A stretch of 64,000 nt of DNA from positions 62,001-126,000 of the forward strand of contig CBFDEM010000052.1 in NCBI GenBank assembly GCA_965603825.1. The letters run 5' to 3'. The notes under the pieces are model-generated. The model saw only the letters and a program-made list of their open reading frames with translations. It had not been told where the DNA came from and did no database searches. The position numbers and the translations under genes are program-made. This document shows positions 490-55,266 of this stretch, piece by piece; the stretch's first letter is position 1, and every line of letters starts with the position of its first letter. This DNA comes from Blepharisma stoltei ATCC 30299. Taxonomy: Eukaryota > Protista > Ciliophora.

Positions 490-900
490 AGAGACCCTTA
501 ACAGCCCATATGAACGTTTTGTGTGATAGAAAGATAAGCAATGCTCACAAATTTGATTTACTATAAAACCACTTTATTTTAATTATTTATTTATGGTTTC
601 TGAACTAGCAATTATGGGTTTTTATGCTACATTAGTCTTTTGAATATCATTTTTATTATTTTTATAGTAAAATCACTTGGCAATTTAGCTTTTTGATATG
701 AGCACATGATGTCGACGGAAAATAATAAATCGTCTATCACATTTCGCTGAGCTGTCTGGTATTCAAAATTCTTGAGATAGAGGAGTGCATTCAATCGACA
801 TAAAATTAACTATTAAAAATTTAAGAATTTTATACAAGAAGTTTAATTAAGGCTCTCGGGCCAATTTCTATATCTCAGATACGTCATAGGATGACAGAAG
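490..900 (-). pseudogene. Decayed copy of the FAB1/PIKfyve upstream region and FYVE-coding 5' end
   Basis: The reverse complement aligns by eye to about 37780-38160 (e.g. ATGTCgATTGAATGCACTCCTCTATCTCAAGAATTTTGAATaCCAGACAGCTCAGC; TTTGTGAGCATTGCTTATCTTT), with deletions and one insertion. Confidence 0.85.
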
Positions 901-989
901 AATAAAATTTCTTAAATGTGCATAAATTATTAATAAATATTCTTATTTGGCGTATGATTTAATTATTAATTTGAAAGTATTTTACAAAA

Positions 990-1530
990 ATGCTGCAGAA
1001 TGGGATTGGTGAAGAAGTTAATGAAACAATATTAATTTTTGATTTTTTACTATTTGCTGGAAAGAGATACTCCTGATATATGCTATTGCTTCTTTTTTGC
1101 TATTATATTTTATGTTTTATTATCAGTAATAGAATGACCAAAACGAAGCATCAAATGAAACTAAGCAGGATTTTCATTTATCTCCAAGCTTTTCCAAGAT
1201 AAAATCTCTTTTATTTAAACTCTTTATTGTGATTAAAAAGGTAAATGCAAATTTCCCTGATATTTCCTCGGTTTCTTCACAATAATCATCATTTGTTATC
1301 CGGAATCATTACATTTATAAAGCCTTAAAATTTTGAATCTTTGGTGCATTCTCAGCATAATGCCCTATGATGACCTAATCTTTAGAAATTCTCATAGAAT
1401 CTGAAAAAAATTCTTTGGCTATCTTTATTATTTATTAGTTGAAGCTGGAGGTCTTGCCCACCAAAAATCTTAAAATTTATATGGAATTTTATATTAATAA
1501 AAATAAAAGCTCAACGAAAATAATTCAGCA
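990..1530 (+). pseudogene. Decayed fragment of the 3' TM-coding region of the receptor gene at 50434-53874
   Basis: Matches about 53135-53760 (GAATGGGaTTGGTGAAGAA..., TTTTATTATCAGTAATAGAA..., CATTTATCTCCAAG) with many indels and stops. Confidence 0.85.
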
Positions 1531-1580
1531 AGAGCATAAGAAAAATTATTGATAGAGGATTTTATGCTAATTCAAAAAAA

Positions 1581-4260
1581 TTAATTATAGTGAAGTTTTC
1601 TCTTCAAAGAATATATCTTGCTATGGCATCTTCCAAGCTGATACACTTTTTGGTGCTTTGAATATAATTTTTCAAGGCTGCTTCTAAATTCCTCGAGAGA
1701 TGAATCCCAACTTTCAGCTCAATTCAAAAAGATCATCTGAGATTCACTAATTCCGACTAAAAATAAGCAGAAAATTTCTGTTTCAAGCTGTGCTCCTCCT
1801 TCATCAGATGACTTTAAAGGCCTTTTTTTCGACTTTCCTGGCACACCTTTTCAGAGCTGAATTCCGTGGGTTGGTGTTTTTTTTGTATATATCATACAAA
1901 CCAGGCTCCATTTTTCTTATGTGATGTGCAAGCTCATGCAAGAAAATTACTTTTTGGGCACAAAGGCTTATTGGCTGAATATTGTTATATTTTGAGTTAA
2001 TAAGGATTTCTCCTCCAAAAATTGTGACACCTGCTAAGTCATCTGGTAATGAAGCGAAATAAACTTGATTATAATAAGGGTTAGTACTATCGAAATTTAG
2101 ATTAATTCTACTAAATCCCTCTGCAACTACATTCGACCGAATCAATTTTCTAAAAGATTTTATTTGAGCTTTGGTTGGCTGAGCTATATCGTCTGAAATT
2201 AATTTTATAATGAACGAGTTTGTTTCAGCCATAAAATTTATAGTTTTTTCAGAGCGTTTCAAGCTAATGCTGAATAAGTTTTTTAATTGTGAAACCAGCC
2301 ATTTTTTGACTTGAGGCTGAAATTTATCTTTTTCAAAAAGAATATTCAGAATATATGATTCTTTGAGCTCTTTTAAAAGATCAATAATCAATGCTATGTG
2401 TGTTTTATTTAGATCAACCTTGTTTTCTTTTTTACCAGAAACTTGACTTTTTTGGCTTGTTGAAGCTTCCAATTCAAGGAACTGATTGGCATCTTCAAGA
2501 TTATTTTCTGTTTTCGTCTCTTCATTTTCTCGCTTTTTCATTTCTTCAAGTTCTTTTTGATATTTTTCAGTTTCTTCTATTAATTTTGCTTTTCTAAATT
2601 CACTATCTCTGAAAATGCTCATAAGAATTTTAGCACAGTAATAAGGGTCATTATAATCAACACTACTTAGACTAAAGTTACCAGCATATTTTTCAAACAA
2701 AAGTTCCACATTAAATAAATCATAATAATTGCTGCTCTGTAGGTAGTTAATTAGAAGTTCAATAAATCTTATAAAATATTCCGGGGCTGTTGTAGCTGAA
2801 TATCCCGCGTGCAATTTCTTGAGACGAAGTAAAAAAAAATTTTTAATTAATTCGTCTGGATTTTCATCTTGATTGCTATTTGCATTTACTGCTATAAATT
2901 TTGAAATCTTTTTCCAAGCTTTAGGTAGAAATTGGAAAATCAATGAAAATATCCTATATCTACCTGTGTATCCTTCTGCATGATTATAGGCATTATCGAA
3001 AAATTTGAAGGCGAACTTCTTTGCTAATTTCTCAAAATCTTCGTAAAAAGCCTTGCTAACGTAAGTCAGCAGCAAAATTTCAAGCATAATTTTTTCAGCA
3101 TTCAAAATTTCTTCATACCAGCTATCCATTTCTCACACTTTTGAGAAGTACTTTTTTAAGAAATTCACTTCACATGAGTTGCTTTCTATTTGATATGTAG
3201 CTAAATCGCCAAGACTTTGCCTTCATAATTTTGGTGAATCAAACAACTTGTGAAGATCAGATTCTCTGACAATAAACTCTATGTTTTTTCGTTTTTTATT
3301 TTTCATATACCAACTGAGTTGATGCATAATCTCTTTAATATAATATGATACAGCTTTTTTATTATTAATCATTTCTTTAGCCTTTTCCCTATAAAAATTT
3401 ACACAAAATGACACTCAGGATTTACTCTTACCAAAAAATGCATATTTATCAAGGTCTAAATAGAAATGACTAACTAATTGCGTTTGCTTTTGGAGGATAA
3501 GCTGAAGAAGTTTCTCCGACTTTCTTTTTTTGAGTTTTTTTAATTCTTCCTTAAGTTTATCTTCTTCCTTACTTTTATCTTCTTCATTGAGCTTTGTAAT
3601 TATATTAAGATACCGATTTAAAGCAGGAAAGAAGCAACTTCATGTTTCTTTTGTAAAAATAAGCTTTAGAACTTTTTTCCAAGAGCCTAAATCAAAGTCA
3701 AAATTAAGATTTTTGGCAAGCGTGAAATTTAAAAATTGTAAAAACCTCCTTAGCAGCAAGTCGATATATTTTTCTGAGTTATCTTCAGTAATAAATCTGA
3801 AGAAGTTTGTTTGAAAAAATGATGTGATTATTGTAAATATTTCTTGGTTAAAAAAATTATTGTCTATTTTTGCAGCGAAACAAGAGAGTGTGAGAATCTT
3901 TATTACTGCATCTATGCAGCACTCACCTCTAATTTCTATTAATTTTATAATCGAGCCAACAAGATCTGGCAAAAACACTTCTAGTGACTTCAAAAAATCT
4001 TCTTTAATCATGTTATGGTAATTTAGCATTGATCCCAGACAATAAAGATCAGATTGGCATTGCAAGTTTTGAGCTTGGGATGGTTTCAAAAGCAGAGAAT
4101 TTACAATTTGATCTATTTGGGAAAATTCTAGCTCACTTAATGTTTGCTCGTTCCAGACTTCTGACGACTCTGGATCGCTTTTTGGCAATCGTGAAATCAA
4201 ATTTCTTATCATTTGATAAAGATCAGATTCTAATATACCTGGATTTTCATTCGTTTGCAT
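1581..4260 (-). CDS. HEXXH zincin-like metallopeptidase-domain protein, tandem copy 1 (~892 aa; +1 frameshift near the C-terminus)
   Basis: Track ORFs 3640-4260, 3223-3414 and 1804-3129 share one frame and are separated only by [11 protein letters not shown] motif. T8 at 1877-1884 versus T7 in copies 2 and 3 shifts the last ~100 codons. The homologous TAA is at 1581-1583. Confidence 0.8.
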
Positions 4261-4758: not shown

Positions 4759-7407
4759 TTAATTATGGTGAAGTTTTCTCTTCAAAGAATATATCTTGCT
4801 ATGGCATCTTCCAAGCTGATATACTTTTTGGTGCTTTGAATATAATTGTTCAAGGCTGCTTCTAAATTCCTCGAGAGGTAATTTCCAACTGCCAGCTCTA
4901 TTCAAAAAGCTAATCTGAGATTCACTGATTCCAATTAAGAATAAGCAGAAAATTTCTGTTTCAAGCTGTGCTCCTCCTTCGTTAGTAAACTTTAAAGTCT
5001 TTTTTTTCTCCTTTCCTGGCACACCTTTTCAGAGCTGCATTCCGTGGGTTGGCGTTTTTTTGTATACATCATAAAAGCCTGGCTCCATTTTTCTTACGTG
5101 ATGTGCAAGCTCATGCAAGAATATTACTTTTTGCGCACAAAGGCTTATAGGCTGAATATTGTTATATTTTGAGTTAATAAGGATTTCTCCTCCAAAAATT
5201 GTGACACCTGCTAAATCATCTGGTAATGAAGCAAAATAAACTTGACTATAATAAGGCTTCGTACTATCGAGATTTAGATTAATTTTTCTAAATCCCTCTG
5301 CAACTACATTTGACTGAATCAACATTTTAAAAGTATCTAATTGACCTTGGCTCGGCTGAGTTATATCGTCTGAAATTAATTTTATAATGAACGAGTTTGT
5401 TTCAGCCATAAAATTTACAGTTTTTTCAGAGAGTTTCAAGCTAAGGTTAAATAAGTTCTTTAATTGTGAAACCAGCCATTTTTTGACTTGAGGCTGAAAT
5501 TTATCTTTTTCAATAAGAATATTCAGAATATATGATTCTTTGAGCTGCTTTAAAAGATCAATGATCAATGTCCTGTTTGGTTTGATTAGATCTACTTCAC
5601 CAAAAGGATGACTAATTTGGCTTGTTGAAGCTTGCAATTCATGCAACTGATTGGTATCTTCAAAATTATTTTCTGTCTTTGTCTCTTCATTTTTTCGCTT
5701 TTTCATTTCTTCAAATTCTTTTTGATATTTTTCAGCTTCTATTAACTTTGCTTTTCTGAATTCAGTATTTCAGAAAATGTTCATAAGAATTTTAGCACAG
5801 TAATAATGATCATTATAATCAACATTACTTAGACTAAAGCTACGAGCATGTATTTCAAACAAAAATTCCATCTCAAATAAATCATAATAATTGCTGCTCT
5901 GCAGATAGTTAATTAGAAGCTCAATAAATCTTATGAAATATTCTGGAGCTGTTGTAGCTGAATATTCCGTGTGCAACTCCTCGAGAGTATCTAAAAAACC
6001 AATTCTATAAGATTTCTCTCCTTTTTTTCCTTGATTATTATTTGCATTTACTGCTATAAATTTGGAAATCTTTTCTCAGGCTTTAGGTAGAAATTGGAAA
6101 ATCAATGAAAATATCCTCTCTCTATTTACGTATCCTTTAACATGATTATATGCATTCTCGATAAATTTGAGGGCGAAATTCATTGCTAATTCCTCAAACT
6201 CTTCATAAAAACTCTGGCTGACATAAGTTAACAGCAAAATTTCTAGCATAATTTTTTCAGCATCTAAAATATTATTATATCATCTATCCATTTCTCACAC
6301 TTTTGAAAAGTACATTTTTAAGAACTTTTGATCACATGAGTTACTTTCTATTTGATATGTAGCTAAATAACCAAGACTTTCTCTTCATAATTTTGGTGAG
6401 TCAAACAATTTGAAAAGCTCAGATTCTCTGACGATAAACTCTATGTTTTTTCGTTTTTTATTTTCCATGTATCATTGGAGTAACCTTATTATTTCTTCAA
6501 TATATAATGATACATCGTTTTCATTATTAATCATTTCTGTAGCCTTTTCCCTGTAAAAATTTACACAAAATGAGACTCAGTATTTACTCTTTCCAAAAAA
6601 TGCATATTTATCAGATTTTACGGAGTGACTGCTTTCTAATTGCTTTTCTTTTTGAAGAATAAGCTGGAGAAGCTCCTCTGACTGTCTTTTTTTGAGTTTT
6701 TGTAATTTTTCCTTACTTTTTTCATCTTCTTCATCGAGCTTTATAGTTATATTAAAATACCGATTTAAAATAGGAAAGATGCAGTTTCATGTTTCTTCTG
6801 TAGAAATAAGTTCTAGCACTTTTTTCCAAGATTCTAAATCAAAGTCAAAATTGAGATTTTTGACAAGCATGAAATTCAAAAATTGTAAAAACCTTCTTAG
6901 CAGCAAGTCCATGTATAATTCTGAGTTACCTTCAATAATAAATCTGAAGAAGTTTGTTTGGAAAAATGATGTGATTGCTGTAAACATTTCTTGGTTAAAA
7001 AAATTATTGTCTATTTTTGCAGTGAAACAAGAGAGTGTGAGAATCTTTATTACTGCATCTATGCAGCACTCACCTCTAATTTCTATTAATTTTATAATCG
7101 AGCCAACAAGATCTGGCAAAAACACTCCTAGTGACTTCAAAAAATCTTCTTTAATCATGCTATGGTAATTTAGCATTGATCCCAGACAATAAAGATCAGA
7201 TTGGCTTTGCAAGTTTTGAGCTTGGGAGGGTTGCAGAAGCAAAGATTTTACAATTTGATCTATTTGGGAAAGTTCTGGCTCACTTAATGTTTGCTCGTTC
7301 CAGACTTCTGACGACTCTGGATCGCTTTCTGACAATCGTGTAATCAAATTTCTTATCATTTGATAAAGATCAGAATCTGATATGCCTGGATTTTCATTCG
7401 CTTGCAT
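4759..7407 (-). CDS. HEXXH zincin-like metallopeptidase-domain protein, tandem copy 2 (882 aa, intact)
   Basis: Single frame with no TAA/TAG from ATG 7407 to TAA 4759 when TGA=W. Motifs [25 protein letters not shown]...[11 protein letters not shown]. Confidence 0.9.
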
Positions 7408-7589: not shown

Positions 7590-7790
7590 GTTTAACCTAC
7601 AGTGCATTCTCAGAATAATCGCCCTATGATGGCCTAATCTTTTAGAAATTCTCATAGAATCTGAAAATTTCTTTGACTATCTTTATTATTTGTTGATTGA
7701 AGCTGGAGGTCTTGTTAGCCAAAGATCTTGAAATCTATATTGTCATTTATATTAATAAAGATCAAAGCTCAATGAAAATAATTCAGTAAG
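7590..7790 (+). pseudogene. Receptor-gene fragment carried in the tandem unit
   Basis: Near-identical to 4520-4720 and homologous to about 53505-53760. Confidence 0.65.
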
Positions 7791-7838: not shown

Positions 7839-10505
7839 TTAATTATGGTGAAGTTTTCTCTTCAAAGAATATATCTTGCTATGACATCTTCCAAGCTGAT
7901 ATACTTTTTGGTGCTTTGAATATAATTTTTCAAGGCTACTTCTAAAAATATTGAGAGATAATTTCCAACTTTCAATTCGATTCAAAAAGTTCATCTGAGA
8001 TTCACTGATTCCAACTAAGAATAAGCAGAAAATTTCTGTTTCAAGCTGTGCTCCTCCTTCGTTAGTAAACTTTAAAGTCTTTTTTTTCTCCTTTCCTGGC
8101 ACACCTTTTCAGAGCTGCATTCCGTGGGTTGGCGTTTTTTTGTATACATCATAAAAGCCTGGTTCCATTTTTCTTATGTGATGTGCAAGCTCATGCAAGA
8201 ATATTACTTTTTGCGCGCAAAGGCTTATTGGCTGAATATTGTTATATTTTGAGTTAATAAGGATTTCTCCTCCAAAAATTGTGACACCTGCTAAATCATC
8301 TGGTAATGAGGCAAAATAAACTTGATTATAATAAGGCTTCGTACTATCGAAATTTAGATTAATTCTACTAAATCCCTCTGCAACTACATTTGACTGAATC
8401 AAATGTTTAAAAGTATCTATTTGATCTTCGTTCGGCTGAGTTATATCGTCTGAAATTAATTTTATTATGAAGGAGTTTGTTTCAGCAATAAAATTTACAG
8501 TTTTTTCAGAGCGTTCCAAGCTTAGGCTAAATAAGTTCTTTAACTGTGAAAGCAGCCATTTTTTGACTTGAGGCTCAAATTTATTTTTTTCAAAAAGAAT
8601 ATTCAGAATATATGATTTTCTGAGCTCTTTTAAAAGATCGATGATCAATGTCCTGTTTGTTTTAATTAGCTCGACCTTGCTTTCTTTTTCACCAAAAGAT
8701 TGGCTAAATTGACTTGTTGAAGCTTGTAATTCATGCAACTGATTGATATCTTCAAAATTATTTTCTTTCTTTGTCTCTTCATTTTTTCGCTTTTCCATTT
8801 CTTCATATATTTTTTGATATTTTTCAGCTTCTTCTAACTTTGCTTCTCTAAATTCAGTATCTCAGAAAATCTTCATAAGAATTTTAGCGCAGTAATACGG
8901 ATCATTATAATCAACATTACTTAGACGAAAGCTATGAGCATATATTTCAAACAAAAATTCCATCTCAAATAAATCGTAATAATTGCTGCTCTGCAGATAT
9001 TTAATTAGAAGCTCAATAAATCTTATGAAATATTCTGGAGCTCTTGTAGCTGAATATTCCGTATGCAACTCCTCGAGAGTTTCTAAAAACCATGCTTTAT
9101 AAGATTTCTCTCCTTTTATTCCTTGATTATTATTTGCATTTGCTGCTATAAAATTGGAAATCTCTTTCCAAGCTTTAGGTAGAAATTGGAAAATCAATGA
9201 AAATATCCTCTCTCTGTTTATGTATCCTTTAACACGATTATAGGCATTCTCGAAAATTTTGAGGGCGAAATTCATTGCTAATTCCTCAAACTCTTCATAA
9301 AAACTCTGGCTGACATAAGTTAGCAGCAAAAGTTCTAGCATAATTTTTTCAGCATGTAAAATATTATTATGTCAGCTATCCATTTCTCAAACTTTTGAAA
9401 AGTAGTTTTTTAAGAACTTTTGGTCACATGAGTTACTTTCTATTTGATATCTAGCTAAATAACTAAGACTTTCTCTTCATAATTTTGGTGAGTCAAACAA
9501 TTTGAAAAGCTCAGATTCTCTGACGATAAACTCTATGTTTTTTCGTTTTTTATTTTCCATGTATCATTGGAGTAGATTTATAATTTCTGCAATATAATAT
9601 GATACATCGTTTTCATTATTGATCATTTCTGTAGCCTTTTCCCTGTAAAAATTTACACAAAATGACATACAGTATTTACTCTTTCCAAAAAATGCATATT
9701 TATCAGATTTTATGTAGAGACTGCTTTCTAATTGCTTTTCTTTTTGAAGAATAAGCTGGAGAAGCTCCTTGGACTTTCTTTTTTTGAGTTTTTTGAGTAT
9801 TTTTAATTTTTCCTCACTTTTATCTTCTTCATCGAGCTTTATAGTTATATTAAAATACCGATTTAAAGCAGGAAAGATGTAGTTTCATGTTTCTTCTGCC
9901 GAAATAAGTTCTAGCACTTTTTTCCAAAAGTCTAATTCAAAGTCAAAATTGAGATTTTTGACAAGCATGAAATTCAAAAATTGCAAAAACCTCCTTAGCA
10001 GCAAGTCCATATATAATCCTGAGTTATCTTCAGTAATAAATCTGAAGAAGTTTGTTTGGAAAAACGATGTGATTGCTGTAAACATTTCTTGGTTAAAACA
10101 ATTATTGTCTATTTTAGCAGCGAAGCAAAAGAGTGTGAGAATCTTTATTACTGCATCTATTCAGCATTCACCTCTAATTTCTATTAATTTTATTATTGAG
10201 CCAACAAGATCTGACAAAGAGGCTTCTAGTGACTTCAAAAAATCTTCTTTAATCATGCTATGGTAATTTAGCATTGATCCCAGACAATAAAGATCAGATT
10301 GGCTTTGCAAGTTTTGAGCTTGGGAGGGTTGCAGAAGCAAAGATTTTACAATTTGATCTATTTGGGAAAGTTCTGGCTCACTTAATGTTTGCTCGTTCCA
10401 GACTTCTGACGACTCTGGATCGCTTTCTGACAATCGTGTAATCAAATTTCTTATCATTTGATAAAGATCAGACTCTGATATACCTGGATTTTCATTCGTT
10501 TGCAT
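7839..10505 (-). CDS. HEXXH zincin-like metallopeptidase-domain protein, tandem copy 3 (888 aa, intact)
   Basis: Five track ORFs in one frame joined by TGA=W. ATG (MQTNEN) at 10505, TAA at 7839. Same motifs as copy 2. Confidence 0.9.
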
Positions 10506-11060
10506 GGTTCTTCTAGCAAATAATAATGGAAAATTAATATTATTAACCCTGATTCTATCTAATATTAATAAAAATAACAAGGTCTGATGTAATGATTTTA
10601 ACAGAAAAAATTAATTTTTGCTAAGAGCATTCATATGGTGATAATTTCATTATTATAAATGGCAGACTTATATTTAAAAGAGCACAGTGAATAGATTCCT
10701 CGTAAGACAATTTTAAGGTAGAGTCAAAACTCTCTCATAAATCGGGTATTAGTAATTTATCACCAATAATAGAATAGTATCCTTTACTCTGTTTATAGAC
10801 TACTGCTTGATAATGCATATATATAGCAACCCAATCAATATTCTTGAATCAGCTCAATTCAAACATTGCATAATCATAAGATTCATTAGGTTTAGCCTAA
10901 CTATCAATCTAGGCCAGTAGCACCAAGGTATGGGTTAATTTTTTTGCTAATTGAAAGCTTTATTAAATTAAAATAAATAACTCCATTCAAATAAATATTA
11001 GATTTTAGAGAGTTGCTATTTATTAAATAATTATTTACTTGCTGAGTCAGATAATCTTAA

Positions 11061-31492: not shown

Positions 31493-32070
31493 TCTATAAT
31501 AATAATTTGTAAAATAAAATTAAAACTTAAGCTTTAAATTTTTAGCAAGATAAATGCACTACAGCTAGGTAAAAATAGAGCTAATCAAGTTCATTAAACA
31601 AAAAATAATATGATTTTGCTTGTATCAGAGTGATTAGCCAAAGGTTTTAAAAATTGATATATATTCAGAGTACACATCAATATGCCATATCGAGTAAATT
31701 AGTGGAAAATTAAGATATTATGGAATTCTTATATTCGATCAACTCTGGCTGGGATTGAGTTCAAGAAACATTTTTAACGTAATTAAGCAATCCCCCAGCT
31801 AAGAGAAACCAATTCAACATATCATAGACAAACTTGTTATTTCCCATTTGTTAGTCATATTTCGAAGCAAGAGCTTGTAAACCTAGAATAGCACATGCCG
31901 ATTTTATGAGGGTAATTTATAGGTTATAAAAAAGACTCAAAATAGTTAATATAAACAATTGAAATCACATTAAGAAAATATGGAAAATCTGCTTTAAATA
32001 TTTAATATTTATTTTTAATTTATATTTACTTAAAAGCCATCTTTTAGAATGCTTAAGTTGTCTACTGAAA

Positions 32071-33198: not shown

Positions 33199-33724
33199 TC
33201 TATAATAAAATTAAACTTAAGTTTTAAATTTCAAGCAATATAAATGCACTAATAGCGAGGCTAAAAATAGAGAATTTATACCAACATTAGATTGGTAAAG
33301 ATTATAATATAGAAGCTGAGCTAATCGAGTCAATTAAACAAAAATAATTTGATTATACTTGGCATCAGAGTGATTAGCCAAAGGTTTTAAAAATTGATAT
33401 GATGCTATTATATAAGGGATTATATTTTCAGAGTGCACATCAACACGAGTAAATTAGTGGAAAATTAAGAGATTATTAAATTCTTATATTTGATCAACCG
33501 GCTGTGATTGAGTCCAAGAAACATTTTTAATGTAATTAAGCAATACCCCCATAAGAGAAGCCAATTCAACATATCATAGAAATTAAAAACAAACATTCAA
33601 AATGGTAAACAATTGAAATCATATTAAAAAAGACATGGAAAATCTGCTTTAAATATTTAATATTTATTTTTAAATTATATTTACTTAAAGCCATCATTTG
33701 GATTGCTTAAGCTGTCTACTGAAA

Positions 33725-34852
33725 TTATCTATTGACTTCACCTTCATAAATTAATTCTATTTCGTTACACTCTCTATTAAGCTTATAGCAATACATCTTC
33801 GGTCTTATAAGAAAACTAGCATAAATATTCCCCTCAAAATAGCTGAAAGTCATATCAAAAGGAAACTCACGAATTCCAAAATTATTATTTCCTATGATAT
33901 TTCATTTAAATGGGTTATTTTCTTCGCTTTCATAAATAGAGTTGTTTTGAATCCATAAATAAACCTTAACTTGATCAGTAAATAAAAATTTACGACTTTT
34001 TGCATGCTTATAAAATCTAATTTCTGAATGAGCTTCAATTAAAAGATCATATAAATAAAAGGATGAGTTATAAAAACTGCTTAATAAGACATAGTTGCGG
34101 AAAAGAACAGCAAAAACTCTTTTATTCAACTGTGGAAATGCCAATTTCTGTCACTCGTTCCGATTTATGTCATATTTTGCCAAGCCTGACCTACCTAAAT
34201 CCCCAAATACAAATAAATAATTTTCATAATAAATAATTTGATTAAAAGTGTCAAATTCATTATATAGGCTAGTAAAATTAAACATCTCAGTTATTGCTTT
34301 AGTTTTTAGATCCATTAATAATCCTTTATATCTTTCTTGGACAGATCCCAAGATAAGTAAATGCGAGTTCGAAATTTTTACATAGTTTGTTATTTTATCA
34401 AGTAAACGTCTATTTGGTTCATAAGATTTTAGCCCAAATGTTGAAGTTATTTTATGAGATTTTAGATTATAAATGTAAATTTCTGTTCCATTTAGATTTT
34501 CGTCAGCATTGTAAAGATAATTGAAATCTGAGTTGTAAGAATTATTATAGTTTTGCTTATGGATTTTGAAAATTTTTTTATTCAATAAAATTTGAGTAAT
34601 GCGACATTGTTCAGCTAAGTCTCTATAAAAGCATTGAATTCGAAGATCATCTTTATACTTTTTAATCATACCCTCTATACTCTTTTGCGAAGCAGAAATG
34701 ATATTAAACTCAGTTTGGAACTGTCTATGGCGATCAGAGTCATTTATATATAAAGTTGTAAGCGTTACTCAAAATTCTTCAATTTTTATCCTTTTCTCTA
34801 ATAAAAATTTTGCAACTTTTATCTTTTGTACTTCTGAATATAAATCTGCCAT
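33725..34852 (-). CDS. Kelch-like protein, copy C (375 aa)
   Basis: ATG 34852 (MADLYSEVQK), TGA at 34769, 34151 and 33902, TAA at 33725. Confidence 0.8.
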
Positions 34853-35339
34853 TCTATAATAAAATTAAACTTAATCTATAAAAATTGAGCAAGATAAATG
34901 CACTATAACAAGGCAAAAAATAGAACACTTATACCAACATTAGATTGGCAAATGTTATGATATAGAAGCTGAGCTAATCGAGGTCAATTAAACAAAAAAT
35001 AATGTGATTTTGCTTGGTATCAGAGTGATTAGCCAAAGGTTTTAAAAATTGATATGATGCTATTATATAAGGGGCTATGGCAATTAAATCAGAGAATCAG
35101 AGTGAACCCATGACTATTGCTATGCCATATTTAAATATATCTTTTTAATTTCTATATATTTTTAATCCCTTGAAATTTTTAAAATAATGAAATTATCCTC
35201 CATTGAGGCTCGACGCTCTAAGAAAAAATTAATTATTAATTTTTTTCTGTTAAAATCATTACATCAGACTATTTTGCCAATATTAGATAGAATCAGGGTT
35301 AATAATACTAATTATCCATTATTAATTCCTAGAAGACCC

Positions 35340-37122
35340 ATGCAAACGAATGAAAATCAAGGTATATCAGAGTCTGATCTTTATCAAATAATAAGAAATT
35401 TGATTTCACGATTGTCAAAAAGCAATCCAGAGTCGTCAGAAGCCTGGAACGAGCAAACATTAAGTGAGCCAGAAATTTCCCAAATAGATCAAATTGTAAA
35501 ATCTTTGCTTTTGAAACTCTCCGAAACACAAAAATTGCAAAGCCAATCCGATCTTTATTGTCTGGGATCAATGCTAAATTACCATAACATGATTAAAGAA
35601 GATTTTTTGAAGTCACTAGAAGTGTTTTTGCCAGATCTTGTTGGCTCGATTATAAAATTAATAGAAATTAGAGGTGAATGCTGCATAGATGCAGTCATAA
35701 AGATTCTCTCACTCTCTTGCTTCGCTGCAAAATTAGACAATAATTTTTTTAACCAAGAAATGTTTACAACAATCATATCATTTTTCCAAACAAACTTCTT
35801 CAAATTTATTACTGAAGATACCCCAGAATTATATATGGGCTTGCTGTTAAGGAGGTTTTTACAATTTTTGAATTTCGCGCTTGTTCAAAATTACAACTTT
35901 GACTTTGATTAACTCCCTCCTTTGCTAGATTTTTTGCTTGATTGCTAAAGCATGTGAAAAAAATTTATTGCGTAGGGGCGCATGAAGGAATTCAAAAATA
36001 GAACTTAAAACCCTATTTTTTTTGATAGACTCTTGGAAAAAAGTGATAGAGCTTATTTTGACAAAAGAAACATGAAACTACATCTTTCTTGCTTTAAATT
36101 GGTATCTTAATATAACTTCAAAGTTCGATGAAGAAGAAGCTAAAAGTAAGGAAGAATTAAAAAACCTCAAAAAAAGAAAGTCCGAGGAGCTCCTTCAGCT
36201 TATTCTTCAAAAGCAAAACCAATTAGGTAACTGCTTCTATGTAAACTCTAATAAATATGCATTTTTTGGAAAGAGTAAATCCTGAGTATCATTTTGTATA
36301 AATTTTTATAGGGAAAAGGCAATAGAAATGATTAATAATGAAAACGCTGTATCATACTATATTCAAGAGATCATGCATCAACTCGATTGGTACATGAATA
36401 ATAAAAAACGAAAAAAATATAGAGTTTATCATCAGAGAATCTAAGCTTTCCAATTTGTTTGATTCACCAAAACTATGAACAGAAAGCCTTAGTACACTAG
36501 CTACATATCAAATAGAAAGCAACTCATGTGACCTGAACTTCTTAAAAAAGTACTTCTCAAAAGTGTGAGAAATGGATAGCTGGTATAATAATATTTTGAA
36601 TGCTGAAAAAATTATGCTTGAAATTTTGCTGCTGACTTATGTCAGCCAGAGTTTTTATGAAGAGTTTGAAGAATTAGCAATGAAGTTCGCCTTCAAATTT
36701 TTCGATAATGCTTATAATCATGTTAGAGAATACATAAATAGAGATAGGATGTTTTCATTGATTTTTCAATCTTTGCCTAAAGTTTGGAAAAAGATTTCGA
36801 AATTTATAGCAGCAAATACAAATATCGATCAAGCAACAAATTCAGAGGAATTTTTTAAGATTGGTTTTTTATTTACTCTAGAGGAGTTGCACACGGAATA
36901 TTCAGCTACAACAGCTCCAGAATATTTTATAAAATTTATTGAACTTCTAATTAGTTATTTTTAGAAGGAATCAGTGAATCTCAAATGAGAGTTTTGAATA
37001 GAGATGAAATTTGGAAATTACCTCTCAATATTTTTAGAAGCAGCCTTGAAAATTTATATTCCAAGAACCAAAAAGTGTTTCAGCTTGGATATACTTTGAA
37101 GAGAAAACTTCACCATAATTAA
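35340..37122 (+). pseudogene. Inverted fourth copy of the HEXXH gene, disrupted
   Basis: MQTNENQG start; 115-nt insertion at 35911-36025; +1 frameshift in the A-run at 36411-36417; ~1-kb deletion at ~36958 removing the HEXXH domain; 3' end KRKLHHN-TAA retained. Confidence 0.9.
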
Positions 37123-37139: not shown

Positions 37140-37690
37140 AAAATCCTCTGTATTAATAAATTTTTCTTATGCTCTTACTTATTTATTTTTATTAATATAA
37201 AAGGCCAATATAAAATTCCAAGATTTTTGGAGGCAAGACCTCAAGCCTTAACTAATAGATAATAAAGACAGCCAAAGAATTTTTTCAGATTCTATGAGAT
37301 TAAGCTAGCATAAGGCGATCATGCTGAAAATAAATTTTAAGGTTGTAAGCCCTTATAAATGTAATGATTCTGAGATAACAAATGCTGATTATTGTGAATA
37401 AACCCAGGTAAATAGCAGTAAATTTGAATTTACCTTTTTTTAGTGACGATAGTGAGTGTAAATAAAAGAGATTTTATCGTGAAAAAGCTTAGAGATAAAT
37501 GAATATTCTGCTCAGTTTCATTTGATACCTTTCTATCACTGATAAAAACATAAAATATGTTAGCAAAAAAGTATCTATAGCATATGCCAGGAGTGTCCCT
37601 TTCCAACACATAATAAAACATCAAAAAATTAATATTGCTTCATTAAGTTATGCATCAATCCCATCTTACATACAAATGCACATTTTTGTA
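37140..37690 (-). pseudogene. Decayed fragment of the receptor gene 3' region
   Basis: Track ORF 37430-37624 contains SNETEQNIHLSLSFFTIKSLLFTLTIVTKK, versus SNEAEQNIHLSPSFLTIKSLLFTLTIVIKK in the receptor. Confidence 0.9.
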
Positions 37691-37884
37691 AAATAATTTC
37701 AAATAAATGCTTAAATCATAAGCCGAACAAGAATATTTGTTAATAATTTATGCACATCTAAGAAATTTTATTCTTCTGTCATTATACGACTTATCTGAGA
37801 TATAGAAAATGGCCCAAAAGCCTTAATGAAACTTCTTGCAATTTTCATAGTATAAAATTGTTGAATTTTTAATAGTCATTTTTT

Positions 37885-40800
37885 ATGTCAATTGAATGCA
37901 CTCCTCTATCTCAAGAATTTTGAATGCCAGACAGCTCAGCAAAATCTTGCTTTAAATGTGATAGACCATTTACCCTTTTCCGTCGACGTCATCATTGTCG
38001 TTTCTGTGGGTTCATTTTTTGTTCTTCATGCTCATATCGAAAAGCTAAATTGCCAAGTGGTTTTACAGTAGATCGAATTTGTGAGCATTGCTTATCTTTA
38101 TTTACACCCTATCCTAATTTATCACACACAACATTCAGTGGGGCTGTTGAAGGATCTTATATTAGCACAACTTCTGTTGTAATCGGAGATGGTCCTTCAC
38201 AAATTGAAGCGGCTCGGGAAATTTATGATTCTTCAAAGCTCATTCAGAGCGAGGAATTTAACTCAATAGAAAAAGTGTCTGAAATGCTGCAGGAATTTCA
38301 AAATAGAGATATCATGTTTGATTCTTACACTAAAGAATTTTTAGATGCTAGAGCAAAAACTTTATTTAAATCCCATCAGATTCCCGAAGAATTGCATAGT
38401 AAAATCATAGGATTTATCGTAGAAATTGTAAACACAATTTGTCCATCTGTAAGGTACAGAAATGATCAACAAGACATAAATAAATATTTTAGAATTGTGA
38501 AATTTGAATGAAATGATTTTAGTGCAAGTGAGTTTGTGAATGGGGTGGTATTTAAAAAGAACGTAGCTCACAAAAAAATGGAAAAAGAATTGATAAACCC
38601 AAGGATTTTATTTTTGCAAGAGGCTTCTGATTTTTATGCGAGGGATAGAAACATTGTGTCTATGGACAAGCTAATTGACCAAGAAGCTTCATATACAAAA
38701 ATTTTTATCAAAAAACTGATGAAAATCAAGCCAAATATAGTTATTTTAGGAAAGGGGCTCCCAAATGCAATTTTAAATGAATTGTCAAGGCTTAATATTA
38801 CAGCATTTATTAACGTAAAACCCAAAATAATGGTTCAGCTATCAAGAGCAACGAAAGGAAAAATCCTAGACCACGTTGACCAAGCTACAAGGATCACAAA
38901 TTACATCGGTACATGTGGCGAATTTTTCCCAAAAACAGTCGGAAATAAAGCCTATGCATTTTTCAAGGACCCAATAGACACCTCATTAGTCGGAAGTCTC
39001 TTAATTTCTGGGCCAGATCCTTCAGATCTCAGCAAAATCGGGACAGTTATCCGGAAACTTTTACTGGAATATAGAAATTCTGTCCTAGAAAAACAGTTTT
39101 TTATCCAATCCGGCATAAAACCTATCCCTGACATGGCTTTAAAATTCAACGATTTATTTATGAATTATACTTATCTTGTAACCTGTGGGTATAATTTATG
39201 TAAAAAACCAGCAGAAAACAGTGTAAACTTTTACCAAGAAAATGATAAAGCAATTGGTGATTTTTTATTATCATTTATTCAGCAATCAGAAAGAAATTGC
39301 GACTCTGACTGTGGGTCGAAATTAATTTCGCACAATTTTTACTTCATAAAAAGCATGGGAAGAATCAAAATAAATTTCACTAAAAAGCTTGACTCAAAAT
39401 CGTCCACTTCAAATGATATTTGTATAGAAAAAGAATGCACAGCCTGCTGCAAACAAGGAGGAAAATGCATTTTACTATCAAAATCTAGCTGGGAGTATAG
39501 CTTTTATAAGTACCTTAACAATTTTTTCACCAATATAGACGTGATCCACAAAAATGCGTGCCACCATGATTTTTTCAAGCTTGGAAAATTCATTTTTTAT
39601 AGCAAAGGCTTCAAGGTGTATATCCAATGGGAAGAAAACCCAATTTATGACTTAATTCCTGCATCCAGCTCAAAAGACCTGACGAGATTTTATCTAAACG
39701 CTACCAGAGAAACCTTTGAAGAACTCAAAACAAATGGTGGAGACGTGCTAAATGATATGCTTAAATCCTGCTCAGAAATGGCTGAGAGATTAAACGGTGA
39801 AGGAATCCTTGAAGAAACAGAAAAATACGCTAAATGGGAGCCGCTAAAAGAAGAAATCGAAAAAATCAAAGAACAAATAGCTGCATCACTAGTAAAATTA
39901 TGTGAGCTCAAGCCTGAGGATTTTCAAAATTTTTTAGAAGTAGAAACTTTTCGAAGAAATATTTTTTTACAATGCTGCAATATAAAAGTCCAAATCCAAA
40001 ATTGGTCTACAAATTTCAAAAGGCTGAAAGTTGGGTCAAGCTTAATTATAACACAAAGTGTTGTGTCAGAATCAAGCGGGTCTAGTGAAGAAAACGTAAA
40101 GTCAGTGCTTACACATAGCAGCACGGGCTATGATGAGAAACGGCAAACAAGTAATGATGAAACCTTTTTTAACCAGACAAGAGGCAGACAAGTGACTCTT
40201 GATGATAGGGACTTGTTTTCGACATCTCCGAATAGCTCGATTGTGGCTAAGCCATTTGATGCGATTTCTAAAGAAGATGAATTTTTGCAGACAGGACATT
40301 TTACATGCCTCAAAAGTGGAAATTTGACTTTGCCAGTAGGGCATGGAGGAGTCTGTGTGCCAGCATATGAAAAAAATCCGTTGACAATAATAGCATATGC
40401 TTTGAATTCTAATAAATATTATGAAGAAATCATAGAACCAAGCAAAATATATGATGGGAATATCACAAATACTCTTGAAGCTAATTTATTATCACAAGAA
40501 GAGCAGCATTTCCAAATTCAAGCTTCTACTTATGAAGACGAGAGCTTTGAAAGCATTGACAAAGAAGAAATCAGAAGACTATACGGCTATCACATAACCT
40601 TTAACATCACAATTTTCTTCGCAAAACAATTCCAAGCAATGAGGACATTTTTATACGGTGAGCATGAAAATTTTATTTTATCAATTGCAAGGAATCTTGA
40701 AAAAGAAAGCTCACTAGGCAAAAGTAAAGCATCATTCACAAAATCTCATAATAAAAAGTATATTATGAAAATCGTCGAAGAAAAAGAATTTCATATGTTT

Positions 40801-41391
40801 ATTGACCTCGTGCCTACATATTTCAAGCATATCAGCAAAAATCTCTTCCATTCTCAGCCTTCAAGGATCGTAAGAACTATTGGCGCTTTTAAAATATCCA
40901 TAAAAAATCACACCACAAATAAAAACCGCACACAATGGGCTTTATTGATGGAGAATTTGGAATTTAATATGCCTTTTGACGTGTATACTTATGATTTAAA
41001 AGGCTCTTCAAACAGTAGAAGATACGTAAAAGAAGGGCAAAAAAGGACCAAAATGGATTTGAATTTTTTAGAAGATATGAAAGGGATTCCTATAACTATT
41101 TCAAAAGAAGCCAAAAAAGTGTTTGACGAAGCTGTTTGGAAAGATACTCATTTTCTATTTAAACAGAATGTGATCGATTATTCTTTATTAGTAATAATCT
41201 CACATCAGCAGCGAAAAGTCGCTGTAGGGATCATAGACTATATAGAAAAATACACCCTGGAAAAAGTTATCGAAAATAAATGTAAGTCAGTCGTCCAAAG
41301 TAAGCCGCCGACTATCACACATCCAAGCTCGTATAAGGACAGATTTCGAGCTCAGCTTACACAGAGTTATTTTATGTCTATTGAGGAATAA
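37885..41391 (+). CDS. FAB1: 1-phosphatidylinositol-3-phosphate 5-kinase FAB1/PIKfyve (1168 aa)
   Basis: ATG 37885. FYVE domain FW(TGA)[19 protein letters not shown]. Chaperonin-like [17 protein letters not shown] motifs GKSKASF, LMENL, YDLKGS, DYSLL, GIIDYI..YT, PT...P..YKDRF. Confidence 0.95.
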
Positions 41392-50433: not shown

Positions 50434-53400
50434 ATGAGGAAATTTTCGTTCTACTCTGTATTTATGATACTATCTAGTGCGGTCGACATCACAATCATAA
50501 GATCACAATATACCCAGTCATTTTTAGACTCATATTCTTTCACTCAGCCTTATAATTCTCTTGATCTAAACTTCTACAACGCAAACTCGTCATCTGGCTT
50601 GACGGATTATTTAAGCTATTACGAAGACCAAGTGGTATTGGATCTCACGAATTCTTTAATTTACTCTGAAATAATTTCCCAAATTTCAGAACGTCAAAAC
50701 CTGCTGCATGTCAAAGTTGACAATTTTTACTTGACGTCAGGTAAAAATTCTTTCACATTAGCCATACCAGTGAAAAATGAAATTTTATCAGCTGGCCAGC
50801 TTTTAAACAGCCTAAATTTGTACTCGTATGGCATTATTTATTTGGAGGAATACAAAGAACAATATAACGACATTATAAATCCTGCAAATGTGGCATTGAT
50901 ACTGCCACATGAGTATAGTGATGAATATCTGAAGACGTTGCTAAATAAATATATCAGGTATTCCTCTGTTAATACTATAATTTTACTGCTGCCTGGAAAA
51001 TTGGCAGCGCAGGTTTTACAAGTGGCTGGGACTGATTTCGAAGACTTAGGATTTGTTTGGATTTTAATGCCAATTGCTGATTATTTATCCTATTCAAAAA
51101 ATACCTCCTTAGAAAATGATGGGCCAATTCTTATGTACTCATCCAGCACTTCTTTAAAATCCAAGCTAACTCTGCTCTATTTTTCATTAAATTTATGCTC
51201 AGAAGCCAATTTTGGCTTACTTGACTGCTTCCAAAAATCCATTGACTTTGACGAAAATCACCAATTATTAGCAAACTACACCATTCTAAACACCCAAAAT
51301 TCCTCTTACATAAACGTAGGAAACGCCACTATTTCTTCTTGCAGCTTATCAGACTCACTAAAATGGTCTCACGGGTCAATAACAGAAAAAACCATATCTA
51401 TCTCCCAAGATGCAGGGCTTTATTCAGCAGCTGGGGCTTATATATCATTTTTAGCCCCATCTTATCACGGGAACGAGCTAGGTGTCAGCTATGTCAACAA
51501 TAACTCAACAATCCTCACAGGGTTCAAGCTAAAAAGAAATACTTATAACTTTGGAAGCTTATATTACAATAAAACATTTATGGAAAGCACATTTAATGAA
51601 GCCAAAGGACAGTTAAAAACCCTTATGATAGCTCCTGCCTTATCAGACGTGGCCATTCACTTGTATTATACTATGCATAATAATTCAGTTAGCTTGCCGA
51701 TGATTGGGTATTCTAATACCGTTGACTCTTTGTCGTCGCCTACAAGTTTTCCTATGTTTTCAAGGGTGAATATGGCTTCTGGGTATATAGGATATGTCCT
51801 AGGGATAATTTTGAACTATTTTGGGTGGTCAAATGTAGGTGTTTTGTACCTGGATAATGTTTTTGCCACAAATGTATTTAATGCATTTGCAGACGAATGC
51901 AAGCAAAAACAGATAAAAATTGTAAATGAAGGCAAAGAAAGGCTGCCTGATAATTCCCCATCATGGAAGCATGAAGAAATTGATCCGACTTTGATAAATT
52001 TAGGAAAAAGTGAAGCAAGAATTATTTTGATGATTTGTTATACCCAAGACGCAACGAGCATTATTACAAGACTATGGGAGCTTGGGTACCATGGAGATAA
52101 TCGTGTAATTATAGCTGTGGGATGGCTTGCAACAAGCATGGTCATGCAAAATGAGTCTGACCCTTCTTATAACGCTACCCAGCTTCATATATTAAGAGAG
52201 TCTTTGAGAGGGTCATTGATGTTTTTCCCTGTTTCTTATGCTGGTGCATTTGGTCAAAAGGTCTATAATGATTATACATATAATTATAAGACTGATCCGA
52301 TTGGCTATACAGGCTTTGCATTTGATTCAATTCTTGCTTCTGCTTATGCTATTGAACAGGTCATTGTACAAGGAAAAGACTACAATGACCCTAATGTCTT
52401 AATGAGCGCTATAAGAAATCTCAGATTTACAGGTGCTACAGGTTTAGTTAAAATAGAGCAGAACACAAATGACAGAGCAGTGATGGATCATTCCATATAC
52501 AATTGTAAAGAAATATCAGAAAATAACTGGGAAATAAAAATAGTTGGCGTTTATTCACCAACTGGCTCCCAAGTTTTTAGTTATACTGATAATATTATAT
52601 GGCCAGATGGGACTCCTATAACTCCTCCAGATGTCCCGATACCTAAAAGCTGCCCATATGATGACTCAGAAATTGAGCCATCCACATCTGGGCATGTAAT
52701 GGTCTGCATTATAGGGTTAATTGTTTTATTCGTTGCTATTTTACCGAGTATTTGTACATGGAAATACTGAAAAGACGTAAAATACTCAGAAATTTTAAAA
52801 AAAACTGAAATGACATTTTATGATATGGTAGCAATTAGTAGGATTTTTATCGAATTTTTTCAGTTAGTAGGGATCGCTCCTTCAATTCCAGCAATTTTTA
52901 ATATGATAAAATTTGTTGGAAATTCCTTGTCTTTGAATTTAGATAAAATGTATATACTCGATAAAACTTATTTTTGGATTTCTATGCAAGCTGCTTTTGG
53001 AGCTTTAGGTGCATCTTTTATAATAAGATTTGCTTATATTATGAAAATTCATGTACCTTTTGTGAAAATTATCATGTCAAGTGTGTGGGATTTATTTTAT
53101 GTTGCGATTTTGTCGACACTTCTTAATGTATTTGTATGTAAGAATGGGGTTGGTGAAGAACTTGATGAGACAATATTAATTTTTGACTGTTTTACTATGT
53201 GTTGGAAAGGGACACACTTGATTTATGCTATTATTTCTTTTTTTGTTATCATTTTTTACGTTTTATTATCAGTAATAGAAAGACCAAGATGGCAAGCATC
53301 AAATGAAGCTGAGCAGAATATTCATTTATCTCCAAGTTTTTTGACGATAAAATCTCTTTTATTTACACTCACTATTGTCATTAAAAAAATCGTAAATACA

Positions 53401-53874
53401 GATTTACCTGTTATTTACCTGGGCTTCTTCACAATGATGAGCATTTTATATCTCGGAATCATTGCATTTATAAAGCCTTATAACCTTAAAATTTTGAATC
53501 TTTGGTATATACTCAGTATGATCGCCCTATGCTGGCTTAATCTTATAGGAATTCTTTATTACATTATGGAAGCCGAAAGCACCATTCTTTGACTGTCTTT
53601 GCTATCTATAGGCTGGGGCTGTATATGCTTTGGAGGTCTTGCTTACCAGAAATCTCGAAATTTATATTGGCCTTTTAGCAGTGGTATTGATAAAAATGAA
53701 AAGCTATATAAATTCGCCTTCAAGAGTAGCAGTGTTGTGGACGCCCAAAAAATAATTCACCAGCTTCGGAAATTTAACCTTGAAAGTTCTCCAACATTTA
53801 ATGAAGTGACGTTTAGGAACCAAAATGATATAAGTGAAGATAACTCGGTAAGAGTGTCTATGGCATTTAACTAA
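50434..53874 (+). CDS. Signal peptide + Venus-flytrap (ANF-receptor/GABA-B-like) ectodomain + multipass membrane receptor (1146 aa)
   Basis: PMIGYSNT..LSSPTSFPMFSRV, YFGWSNVGVLY, SEARIILM, AFDSILASAYAI, LRFTGATGLVK, IIWPDG, then about 7-8 hydrophobic segments. Joined by TGA at 52768 and 53590. Confidence 0.88.
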
Positions 53875-53939
53875 TGAAGAGGGTAAAGAGTAATAAGGTC
53901 ATAAATAGCTTAAAATCTTAACTAATTAAGCTTATAAAT

Positions 53940-54200
53940 TGAATAGAGGATTGGATATAATGATGAAGTTTTCTATTCAAAAATATATCTTGTTCTGAAT
54001 CTTCAAATATGATACTTTTTAGACGTTTTGGGTTTGAATTTTCAAGGCTTCTTCTAAAATGCTTAAGAGAGCTTCCTCAGTTGTCAGTTCAAATAAAAAA
54101 TATCTGTTTTCACCAATCTCCATAAAAAAACTGTTTCAAGCTGCGATCCTCTGATTTTTTAAATTTTTTTCTGCAATCCTGATACACCTTTAAAGAGCCT
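53940..54200 (-). pseudogene. Heavily decayed 3' remnant of the HEXXH gene (weak similarity may extend to ~54450)
   Basis: TGAAGTTTTCTaTTCAAAaATATATCTTG, TTTTCAAGGCTtCTTCTAAA, CTGTTTCAAGCTGcG and CCTGatACACCTTT are colinear with 1590-1858. Confidence 0.75.
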
Positions 54201-55266
54201 CTTTCATAAGGTAGAGTTTATTATTTTTATGAGTACTTATATATTTGAAATCTTTTATTTATTTATCAAATAAGGGCTAGATGGGATGCATAAAAGATTT
54301 ATTTATGAAAACGAAGCAATAGGGAATAATTTTTTTGGAATTAATTGTCTACCACCTTATGATATAACTTCCAACATTTTTAAGGGAATATTTATGGTTG
54401 TTTTCTTATAAGGCAGCGTATGTCTTTTATAAGTTTAGTAGAGAAAGAAAATAAATTGAGTTTTCAAAAATAAATAAATTTATTTTGTTTGAAGCTTAAG
54501 CAACTTTAGAATAAAAAGCAAATTATAAATGTAAGTATTAGATACTTATCGATTTCTGCGAATAAATAAGATGAATACCTAAAAGGATTGAAACGAGTGT
54601 CGCAATATTGAATGATTTTTAATAAACTTCATTTTGAGAATAATTCATGATCTTCAAAAATAATAGCAATATGACTGGAAAGACTGCATCAACATATTTT
54701 ATTTAAATAAAAGATAGCTGATAATTTTATCAGACATTTGAAATGCAGCCTCATAATATTTGCAGACTATAAATTTTAAGCACGGATTTAGAGAGCTAAA
54801 TTTAAATTGCGCTCATGCTATATTATATGATATTAAGTTGTGTTTTATTTAAAATATGTAAGCTGAATAAGGTTTTAATTTTATCTCGTCTTTATGAAGA
54901 TTAGAAATTTGCTTTCCCTAAATTTTATAATTCCCGAAATTTTAAGCTTAATGTATGTAAGGTAGCCCCATTTTTATTTTTAACCTCTTTTAATTTCTCC
55001 ACTAATTTAACATATACCAAATACCTTAAAGATTTTTAGCTACAACCATAACATATGCTCGTCTTCGAGAATAAACCAAAATTAGGCACAGAAATTATAC
55101 TCATTTATAAAAAAATAATAAATATTATTAAGGTATGGTATATTGTAAAATAATACGATTTTTAATTTTGATCAAATCAAAGTGGCTGTTTTCAAGCTGA
55201 GAAGCAAACGAGTAAACGAGAATTCATCAATCTCCATATTTTTATGCATAAATTCGGGAAAAATTA

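What the first reader, a model, noticed from the sequence alone, without database searches (positions are those of the whole stretch)
490..54450. A metallopeptidase gene that hops locally, captures its downstream neighbour each time and leaves a decayed donor
Seen in sequence: (1) At 53.9 kb the intact receptor gene is tail-to-tail with a heavily decayed HEXXH-gene remnant. (2) At 35.2-37.7 kb an inverted, recently broken HEXXH copy is followed by a receptor 3' fragment and then the intact PIKfyve gene. (3) At 0.5-4.3 kb, re-inverted, the HEXXH gene is followed by the receptor fragment and a PIKfyve 5' fragment. (4) That unit was then tandemly triplicated. Inference: the nested cargo orders the events as 54 kb, then 36 kb, then 1-10 kb, and decay increases with inferred age. 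Captured DNA accumulates only on the gene's 3' side, while the shared 5' flank is only about 150-170 nt. That asymmetry recalls 3' transduction by Helitrons or LINEs, but no transposase or RT is encoded in the window.
Basis: partly seen in the sequence, partly recalled or inferred. Interest (0 to 1): 0.8.

Follow-up and report, generated by a model that had tools for sequence, protein, structure and literature searches.

The report
Serial inverted duplications in ciliate germline
In the ciliate Blepharisma, a fast-evolving putative zinc-protease gene was copied twice in inverted orientation with pieces of its neighbours on both sides, then tripled in tandem; leftover germline-only spacers show that these were ordinary germline DNA duplications, not a gene that hops like a transposon.

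Summary
The window is Blepharisma stoltei somatic DNA (UGA = Trp). The nested structure is real: remnant E (54 kb), broken copy D (35-37 kb) and tandem copies A/B/C (1.7-10.5 kb). The receptor fragments come from the local receptor and branch as (R54,(RD,(RA,(RB,RC)))), support 100/99.

The claimed 3'-only capture is wrong, because 5' cargo travelled too. E is fused to a Kelch 3' fragment in the same head-to-head layout as K3/D. Copy C's 5' flank holds the K3 start plus part of K3's germline IES. Copy A's PIKfyve fragment still carries PIKfyve's 125-nt IES, so the template was germline DNA, not mRNA. I found no poly(A), target-site duplication, TIR or Helitron end.

Best reading: two inverted segmental duplications, then tandem amplification and birth-and-death. 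Each duplication was either a templated insertion or a staggered-break inversion. Whether 54 kb or 36 kb is the ancestral site is unresolved. D's 115-nt 'insertion' is the unexcised half of a 227-nt IES. The scan has already noted HExxH arrays and retained IESs elsewhere in this genome.

The parts
492..762 (-). PIKfyve 5' fragment in the copied block, truncated about 230 somatic nt after the ATG
   Evidence: aligns to germline PIKfyve, score 240 vs shuffled maximum 35; seen in DNA contigs of 3 runs
563..678 (-). retained homologue of the 125-nt PIKfyve IES with both terminal direct repeats (left one mutated); now somatic DNA
   Evidence: IES after window 38054 in the MAC+IES assembly; 84-93% match, E 7e-21; alignment
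763..995 (-). copy of the PIKfyve upstream region (37680-37923); not receptor-derived
   Evidence: 86% to the D block; no significant match to R54 or R15
997..1530 (+). receptor 3' fragment RA, dead on arrival
   Evidence: 81% to R54; 11-nt and 7-nt deletions shared with RB, RC, RD; changes even across codon positions
1747..4260 (-). HExxH gene copy A (837 aa); frameshift in an A-run near 1880 removes the EGGxxLE segment
   Evidence: annotated protein P0015
4469..4720 (+). receptor fragment RB
4759..7407 (-). HExxH gene copy B, intact (882 aa, UGA=Trp)
7590..7790 (+). receptor fragment RC
7839..10505 (-). HExxH gene copy C, intact (888 aa)
10659..10737 (+). 5' cargo: Kelch start (MADLYL) plus the first part of K3's germline IES; most of the K3-D spacer is deleted
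   Evidence: the only matches of this start pattern in the window are K1, K2, K3 and 10659; score 88, 0/500 shuffles vs germline K3
30362..34852 (-). tandem Kelch-motif genes K1 (30362-31492), K2 (32071-33198), K3 (33725-34852) sharing one IES at the same site
34853..35339 (.). divergent K3-D spacer; parts recur upstream of C33 and in A's germline flank
35340..37120 (+). copy D, broken: stop-containing insert, frameshift near 36410, ~870-nt deletion at 36953/36955 that removes HExxH
35911..36025 (+). unexcised part of a 227-nt ATT-bounded IES; the adjoining 112 nt are excised
   Evidence: IES after 36025; ATT-to-ATT distance 227; contigs of an RNA-like run show two other excision products
37165..37700 (-). 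receptor fragment RD; homology ends a few bases inside the receptor's 101-nt IES (53126)
37924..41391 (+). intact PIKfyve (FYVE, Cpn60_TCP1, PIP5K)
50434..53874 (+). intact ANF-receptor/transmembrane gene R54 (1146 aa)
   Evidence: private changes mostly at third codon positions
53960..54230 (-). remnant E: last ~270 nt of the HExxH gene, without the motif
54225..54510 (+). Kelch 3' remnant fused head-to-head to E, most simply by one deletion

Best explanation
A germline block 'Kelch <- -> HExxH gene -> <- receptor 3' end' was duplicated in inverted orientation between 54 kb and 30-37.7 kb (event 1), leaving a receptor fragment next to PIKfyve. Later the stretch from the K3 start to ~230 nt into PIKfyve was copied from germline DNA, IESs included, in inverted orientation to 0.5-10.7 kb (event 2). 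Unequal crossing-over then tripled the gene (A first, then B/C), and the Kelch gene was tripled at 30-35 kb. Redundant copies decayed: E and its Kelch neighbour by one deletion; D by deletion, frameshift and partial IES excision; A by a late frameshift. The copying is ordinary double-strand-break repair (templated insertion or staggered-break inversion) and needs no element-encoded enzyme. The protein is an unclassified zincin-like putative metallopeptidase of a family that forms tandem arrays across this genome. SHOWN: homologies, two-sided cargo, germline template for event 2, order of the receptor fragments, lesions. INFERRED: repair pathway, direction of event 1, peptidase activity.
For: Two-sided cargo. 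PIKfyve IES retained in A. Receptor tree and AU tests. Fragments evolved neutrally from the start while R54 stayed constrained. E and the Kelch remnant have equal branch lengths, 0.44 and 0.46. No poly(A), TSD or CTRR end. No long ORF in the IESs of 400 nt or more (longest 171 aa). Copies show dN/dS about 0.5. Family members are tandemly arrayed on C1, C45, C47, C54 and C55. The Kelch and RING neighbours are tandemly duplicated too.
Against: E and the Kelch remnant look more decayed (0.44-0.46) than the receptor fragments of the same event (0.19-0.30); indel-rich alignment may inflate this. The A-C block is IES-poor (2 vs ~14 expected, P about 1e-4), which a plain germline copy does not explain. 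Solo broken copies on C33 and C54 show that the gene also reached other contigs.
Confidence: 0.8

Rival explanations
1. Sub-model of the best explanation: staggered-break inversions reusing the 36-kb region. D is the ancestral site. Inverting 37.7-53.1 kb moved the intact receptor to 54 kb and created E as the daughter; event 2 may be a second such inversion. The gene did not hop from 54 kb.
For: It predicts an intact receptor at one end, a truncated fragment beside PIKfyve at the other, and obligatory inverted orientation (two of two here). The mechanism is documented in Drosophila, with 59% of inversions and duplicates ~88% identical (PMC1885836). It gives the same trees as the insertion model.
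Against: For event 2, both K3 and PIKfyve are intact at 36 kb and both truncated at 0.5/10.7 kb, which needs an extra deletion. The Kelch remnant, K4 and K5 share one orientation around the 55-69 kb gene, which favours 54 kb as the older Kelch cluster. Event 2's outer flanks join into a 16-bp palindrome, a weak sign of insertion at one site.
Confidence: 0.3
2. Transposon- or excisase-driven move in the germline: MITE/IES ends or the domesticated PiggyBac excisase cut near IESs and mobilised the block; the responsible element is invisible because it is removed from somatic DNA.
For: One boundary of each event falls in a germline IES (53126 and 34830). Bogo-like MITEs lie at 35114, 35847 and within 54464. 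The copies are of germline origin.
Against: IESs make up about 26% of this germline contig, so 2 of 4 boundaries is expected by chance (P about 0.28). Neither boundary IES matched the MITE family. There are no paired TIRs or TSDs, and the PIKfyve-side boundary has no IES nearby.
Confidence: 0.1
3. One reading: LINE- or Helitron-like 3' transduction that adds downstream cargo at each hop.
For: Nested 3' cargo is real. LINE elements exist in this somatic genome (PMC9942856), and one with an APE endonuclease domain sits inside a paralogue on C45.
Against: 5' cargo accompanies E, C and C33; the copy retains a germline IES; there is no poly(A), TSD or CTRR end; copy number is low; ends are not shared.
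Confidence: 0.03
4. Assembly artefact.
For: None found.
Against: Copies differ by 7-30%. Contigs of three DNA runs match D's insert region and the RD-PIKfyve junction with no mismatches and carry A's flank. The MAC+IES assembly is collinear, though it is built on the same somatic assembly.
Confidence: 0.01

Closest known systems
Interspersed segmental duplication / templated insertion by double-strand-break repair, followed by tandem amplification and birth-and-death
   Same: Multi-kb block with truncated neighbour fragments on both sides, no element ends, later tandem copies and pseudogenes
   Different: Here germline-only IESs act as tracers that show the template nucleus; two successive events nest within 55 kb
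Inversion-associated inverted duplications by staggered breaks (Ranz et al. 2007, PMC1885836)
   Same: Inverted duplicates of unique genes, one copy decays, similar identity, breakpoint reuse
   Different: No inversion is demonstrated (no outgroup order); blocks were 3.4 to about 5 kb vs at most about 1.9 kb aligned in Drosophila
IESs carried in segmental duplications, alternative IES boundaries and IES recruitment in Paramecium (PMC3464196)
   Same: Duplicated IESs at homologous sites, loss of excision, use of alternative TA boundaries
   Different: Heterotrich species; the retained IES lies in a truncated cargo fragment and is used here as evidence of mechanism
L1 3' transduction and Helitron gene capture (from my own knowledge)
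   Same: Downstream sequence accumulates in successive copies
   Different: Two-sided cargo, IES retained, no poly(A)/TSD, no TC...CTRR ends
Zincin minimal metallopeptidases (selecase, abylysin, SPRTN) and Tox-MPTase3-like eukaryotic clusters
   Same: HExxH helix plus a downstream conserved Glu (EGGxxLE); best structural hits are zincins (Z 5.5-5.9); Atlas feature hits 0.95
   Different: No Pfam or PDB sequence match; Z values are modest; long unknown N-terminal part; activity untested

Membership tests
LINE-mediated 3' transduction | RNA intermediate (copy lacks germline-only IESs) | tested here: not met
   A's PIKfyve fragment holds the 125-nt IES with its direct repeats
LINE-mediated 3' transduction | poly(A) tail and target-site duplication | tested here: not met
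   no A-tail; longest direct word shared by the flanks is 6 nt; age may have eroded these
LINE-mediated 3' transduction | cargo only 3' of the element | tested here: not met
   Kelch cargo 5' of E and C, Kelch promoter 5' of C33
Helitron capture | 3' hairpin followed by CTRR, conserved ends | tested here: not met
   a 7-bp hairpin lies at the distal end, but the nearest CTRR is about 40 nt beyond it; ends differ among copies
Helitron capture | RepHel gene in the genome | not tested
   not searched; the word Helitron does not occur in the germline genome paper
Cut-and-paste DNA transposon / Pack-type element | terminal inverted repeats plus TSD | tested here: not met
   only an 8-nt inverted word at the event-2 ends, absent from the donor, chance about 1-6%; no TSD
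Segmental duplication | over 1 kb of collinear, non-repeat DNA including intergenic parts and truncated neighbours | tested here: met
Segmental duplication | germline DNA template | tested here: met
   PIKfyve IES and K3 IES parts in the copy; K1-K3 share an IES
Staggered-break inversion | inverted duplicates with one intact and one truncated neighbour | tested here: met
   met for event 1 (R54 intact, RD truncated); not cleanly for event 2
Staggered-break inversion | intervening segment inverted relative to an outgroup | tested here: inconclusive
   Stentor-like contigs and B. stoltei paralogues share no informative neighbours
Zincin metallopeptidase | HExxH plus third zinc ligand | tested here: met
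   H157 and E158 invariant, H161 and E208 at 90% or more over 19 relatives; present in B and C; A lacks the Glu segment; D and E lack HExxH
Zincin metallopeptidase | zincin fold | tested here: inconclusive
   model of the C45 paralogue, pLDDT 81; top four hits are zincins at Z 5.5-5.9; Foldseek no hit at E<=0.001
Zincin metallopeptidase | proteolytic activity | not testable with these tools
   needs an assay
Pfam Tox-MPTase3 (PF15639) | HMM match above cut-off | tested here: not met
   no hit in 19 members; the genome search found none but its control was also silent; only an Atlas feature lead

The most novel reading that the evidence does not exclude
In Blepharisma, cuts made at IES or MITE ends in the germline seed local inverted duplications. 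The genome-editing machinery would then itself drive gene relocation, and fast-evolving HExxH/Kelch families would spread this way, sometimes through IES-poor templates (the A-C block is strikingly IES-poor).
Probability: 0.08. Interest if true: 0.7.

Novelty: new member of a known kind. Interest (0 to 1): 0.3.

Why it matters
It is a clean worked example of gene birth, relocation and death in a ciliate. It shows that IESs left in duplicated cargo can tell a germline DNA template from an RNA or somatic one. Applied genome-wide to the MAC+IES assembly, that test could settle how dispersed duplicates arise in Blepharisma and whether breakpoints favour IESs. It is not a new mobile element.

Tried and rejected
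- Standard genetic code: rejected; UGA=Trp restores long ORFs.
- Fragments derived from a paralogous receptor: rejected (C15 paralogue 61-64%; the other ~145 family hits about 30% aa).
- The segment 37700-37923 as further receptor sequence or receptor IES: not significant.
- D's insert as a somatic repeat: single copy; it is part of an IES.
- Tree of the short 3' end including E: unresolved, all AU tests p > 0.2. A vs D order in the whole-gene tree is also open (45/7).
- Synteny with Stentor-like contigs and paralogues: uninformative.
- Single-sequence AlphaFold failed (pLDDT 36). Pfam and PDB sequence searches were blank.
- D was read once in a script across the joint seen in reads, to check the frame.

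Full report
Organism and code. The window lies in a 41.46-Mb, 64-contig assembly. Long ORFs appear only when UGA is read as Trp, and a paralogue is annotated as Blepharisma stoltei. This fits the published somatic (MAC) genome (PMC9942806). A germline-like version of the same contig, with internally eliminated sequences (IESs) put back, was reached through GCA_914767885.1. It covers window 1-23.6 kb and 30.7-57.2 kb and made the decisive tests possible.

What is there. A self-comparison shows three tandem copies A, B, C of a ~2.65-kb gene (87-92% identical), an inverted copy D at 35.3-37.1 kb, and a remnant E at 53.96-54.23 kb. B and C are intact. A has a frameshift after HELAHH that removes the conserved EGGxxLE segment. 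D has a stop-containing 115-nt insert, a frameshift near 36410 and an ~870-nt deletion that removes the motif. E keeps only the last ~270 nt. Receptor fragments follow A, B, C and D; the PIKfyve upstream region and 5' end follow A only. Contigs from three DNA runs match D's insert and the RD-PIKfyve junction exactly and carry A's flank, so mis-assembly is unlikely.

Order of events. The receptor fragments are 81% identical to the local receptor R54 and 61-64% to its closest paralogue on C15. The tree is (R15,(R54,(RD,(RA,(RB,RC))))) with 100/99 support, and the alternatives are rejected at p-AU about 0.002. All fragments share 11-nt and 7-nt deletions. Their shared changes fall evenly over codon positions (8/4/6), while R54's own changes are mostly third-position (10 of 16), so the fragment was dead on arrival. 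The gene tree groups A-D against the dispersed copies on C33 and C54 (99/99) and B with C (100/100), but leaves A vs D open. E cannot be placed. dS is 0.11 for B-C and 0.21-0.25 for A-B/C, with dN/dS about 0.5.

The asymmetry fails. E is joined directly to the 3' end of a Kelch gene (54225-54510, 75% to K1-K3, far above shuffles), in the same head-to-head layout as K3 and D. One deletion of both 5' parts explains it, and the two remnants have equal branch lengths (0.44 and 0.46). Copy C's 5' flank holds a Kelch start at 10659. The only other matches of that pattern in the window are the starts of K1, K2 and K3. The flank continues into the beginning of K3's germline IES (0/500 shuffles). A's germline flank reaches D position 35049, and the dispersed C33 copy carries the Kelch/D promoter. 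Cargo therefore travelled on both sides.

The template was germline DNA. PIKfyve has a 125-nt IES after position 38054. Copy A's PIKfyve fragment contains that IES with both direct repeats, now kept in somatic DNA (E 7e-21; score 240 vs shuffled maximum 35). A somatic mRNA would lack it. No poly(A), target-site duplication, CTRR end or TIR was found, and no IES of 400 nt or more holds an ORF over 171 aa. This rejects LINE or Helitron transduction and points to ordinary segmental duplication.

Direction and pathway. Two repair routes fit. It is mildly favoured by the shared orientation of the Kelch remnant with K4/K5 beyond 55 kb, and by both K3 and PIKfyve being intact at 36 kb. A staggered-break inversion (PMC1885836) from an ancestral site at 36 kb gives the same pattern for event 1 and explains why each copy is inverted; E would then be a daughter, not a donor. 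Outgroup order could not be obtained. One boundary of each event lies inside an IES (53126, 34830), but IESs make up about 26% of the germline contig, so this is not beyond chance.

How D decayed. The 115-nt insert abuts a 112-nt IES; together they form one 227-nt ATT-bounded element, close to the ~228-bp IES size class. This strain removes only the right part. Contigs from an RNA-like run show a form without the insert and a form cut at a downstream TA; the first may come from the second strain in the mating mix. Alternative IES boundaries and IES recruitment are known in Paramecium (PMC3464196).

The protein. No Pfam or PDB sequence match was found. The large search found 25 relatives: B. 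stoltei paralogues and unnamed proteins from a transcriptome, metagenomes and sequencing runs. They conserve GxTxFGG, HExAH and EGGxxLExxLFG. A model of the C45 paralogue's domain (pLDDT 81) matches small zincins best, at modest Z 5.5-5.9. Atlas look-alikes include a cluster named after Tox-MPTase3, but that Pfam model does not match. It is a putative zincin metallopeptidase of an unclassified family; activity is inferred. Paralogues form tandem arrays on several contigs, as earlier notes of this scan also report.

Left unexplained. The A-C block has 2 called IESs against about 14 expected (P about 1e-4), while D's block has 5. This may reflect IES-calling limits in repeats, later gain in the dying copy, or an IES-poor template. 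E and its Kelch neighbour look more decayed than the receptor fragments. The outer flanks of event 2 join into a 16-bp palindrome (weak, post hoc).

Verdict. It is a new example of a known kind; its value is the IES tracer. Interest 0.3.

Noticed in passing
L046:1-1300 and L049:1930-3504 (C45, about 169.5-172.5 kb): A non-LTR retrotransposon (Exo_endo_phos_2 hit, E 2e-11; RT-like motifs by eye) is inserted in antisense inside an HExxH paralogue in the somatic assembly.
   Followed up: partly
L002:4330-4422 and L001:1176-1268: The dispersed broken copies on C33 and C54 share a ~90-nt block about 250 nt downstream of the stop (79%); it is absent from the window and its source is unknown. C54 keeps the 3' flank that E has and A-D lost.
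   Followed up: partly
window 490-10740: Only 2 called IESs against ~14 expected from neighbouring DNA, none in coding parts.
   Followed up: partly
window 483-490 and 10730-10737: The outer flanks of the copied block end in an 8-nt inverted word and would join into a 16-bp palindrome; a 7-bp hairpin also sits at the distal end.
   Followed up: partly
window 31656 and 33420 (germline IESs) vs 35050-35120: Sequence that is somatic in the K3-D spacer is excised as IES in the K1 and K2 repeats, i.e. IES status differs among tandem copies.
   Followed up: partly
window 55252-64000 and L057:1-4829: Very large AAA-domain gene (4515 aa called; RNF213/mysterin-like by my reading) flanked by Kelch genes K4/K5 and the Kelch remnant.
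   Followed up: no
window 1-442 and upstream in L077: The small membrane-protein gene left of the block also has a tandem duplicate (80%).
   Followed up: no
L015/L064 (C15, 78.7-87 kb): The old receptor paralogue (dS 1.6) is also tail-to-tail with an array of the same Kelch family, so the receptor-Kelch neighbourhood is ancient.
   Followed up: partly
window 11989-12117 and 43735-43863: A 130-nt intergenic repeat (83%), partly also on C33 (L055:3575-3628); not examined.
   Followed up: no
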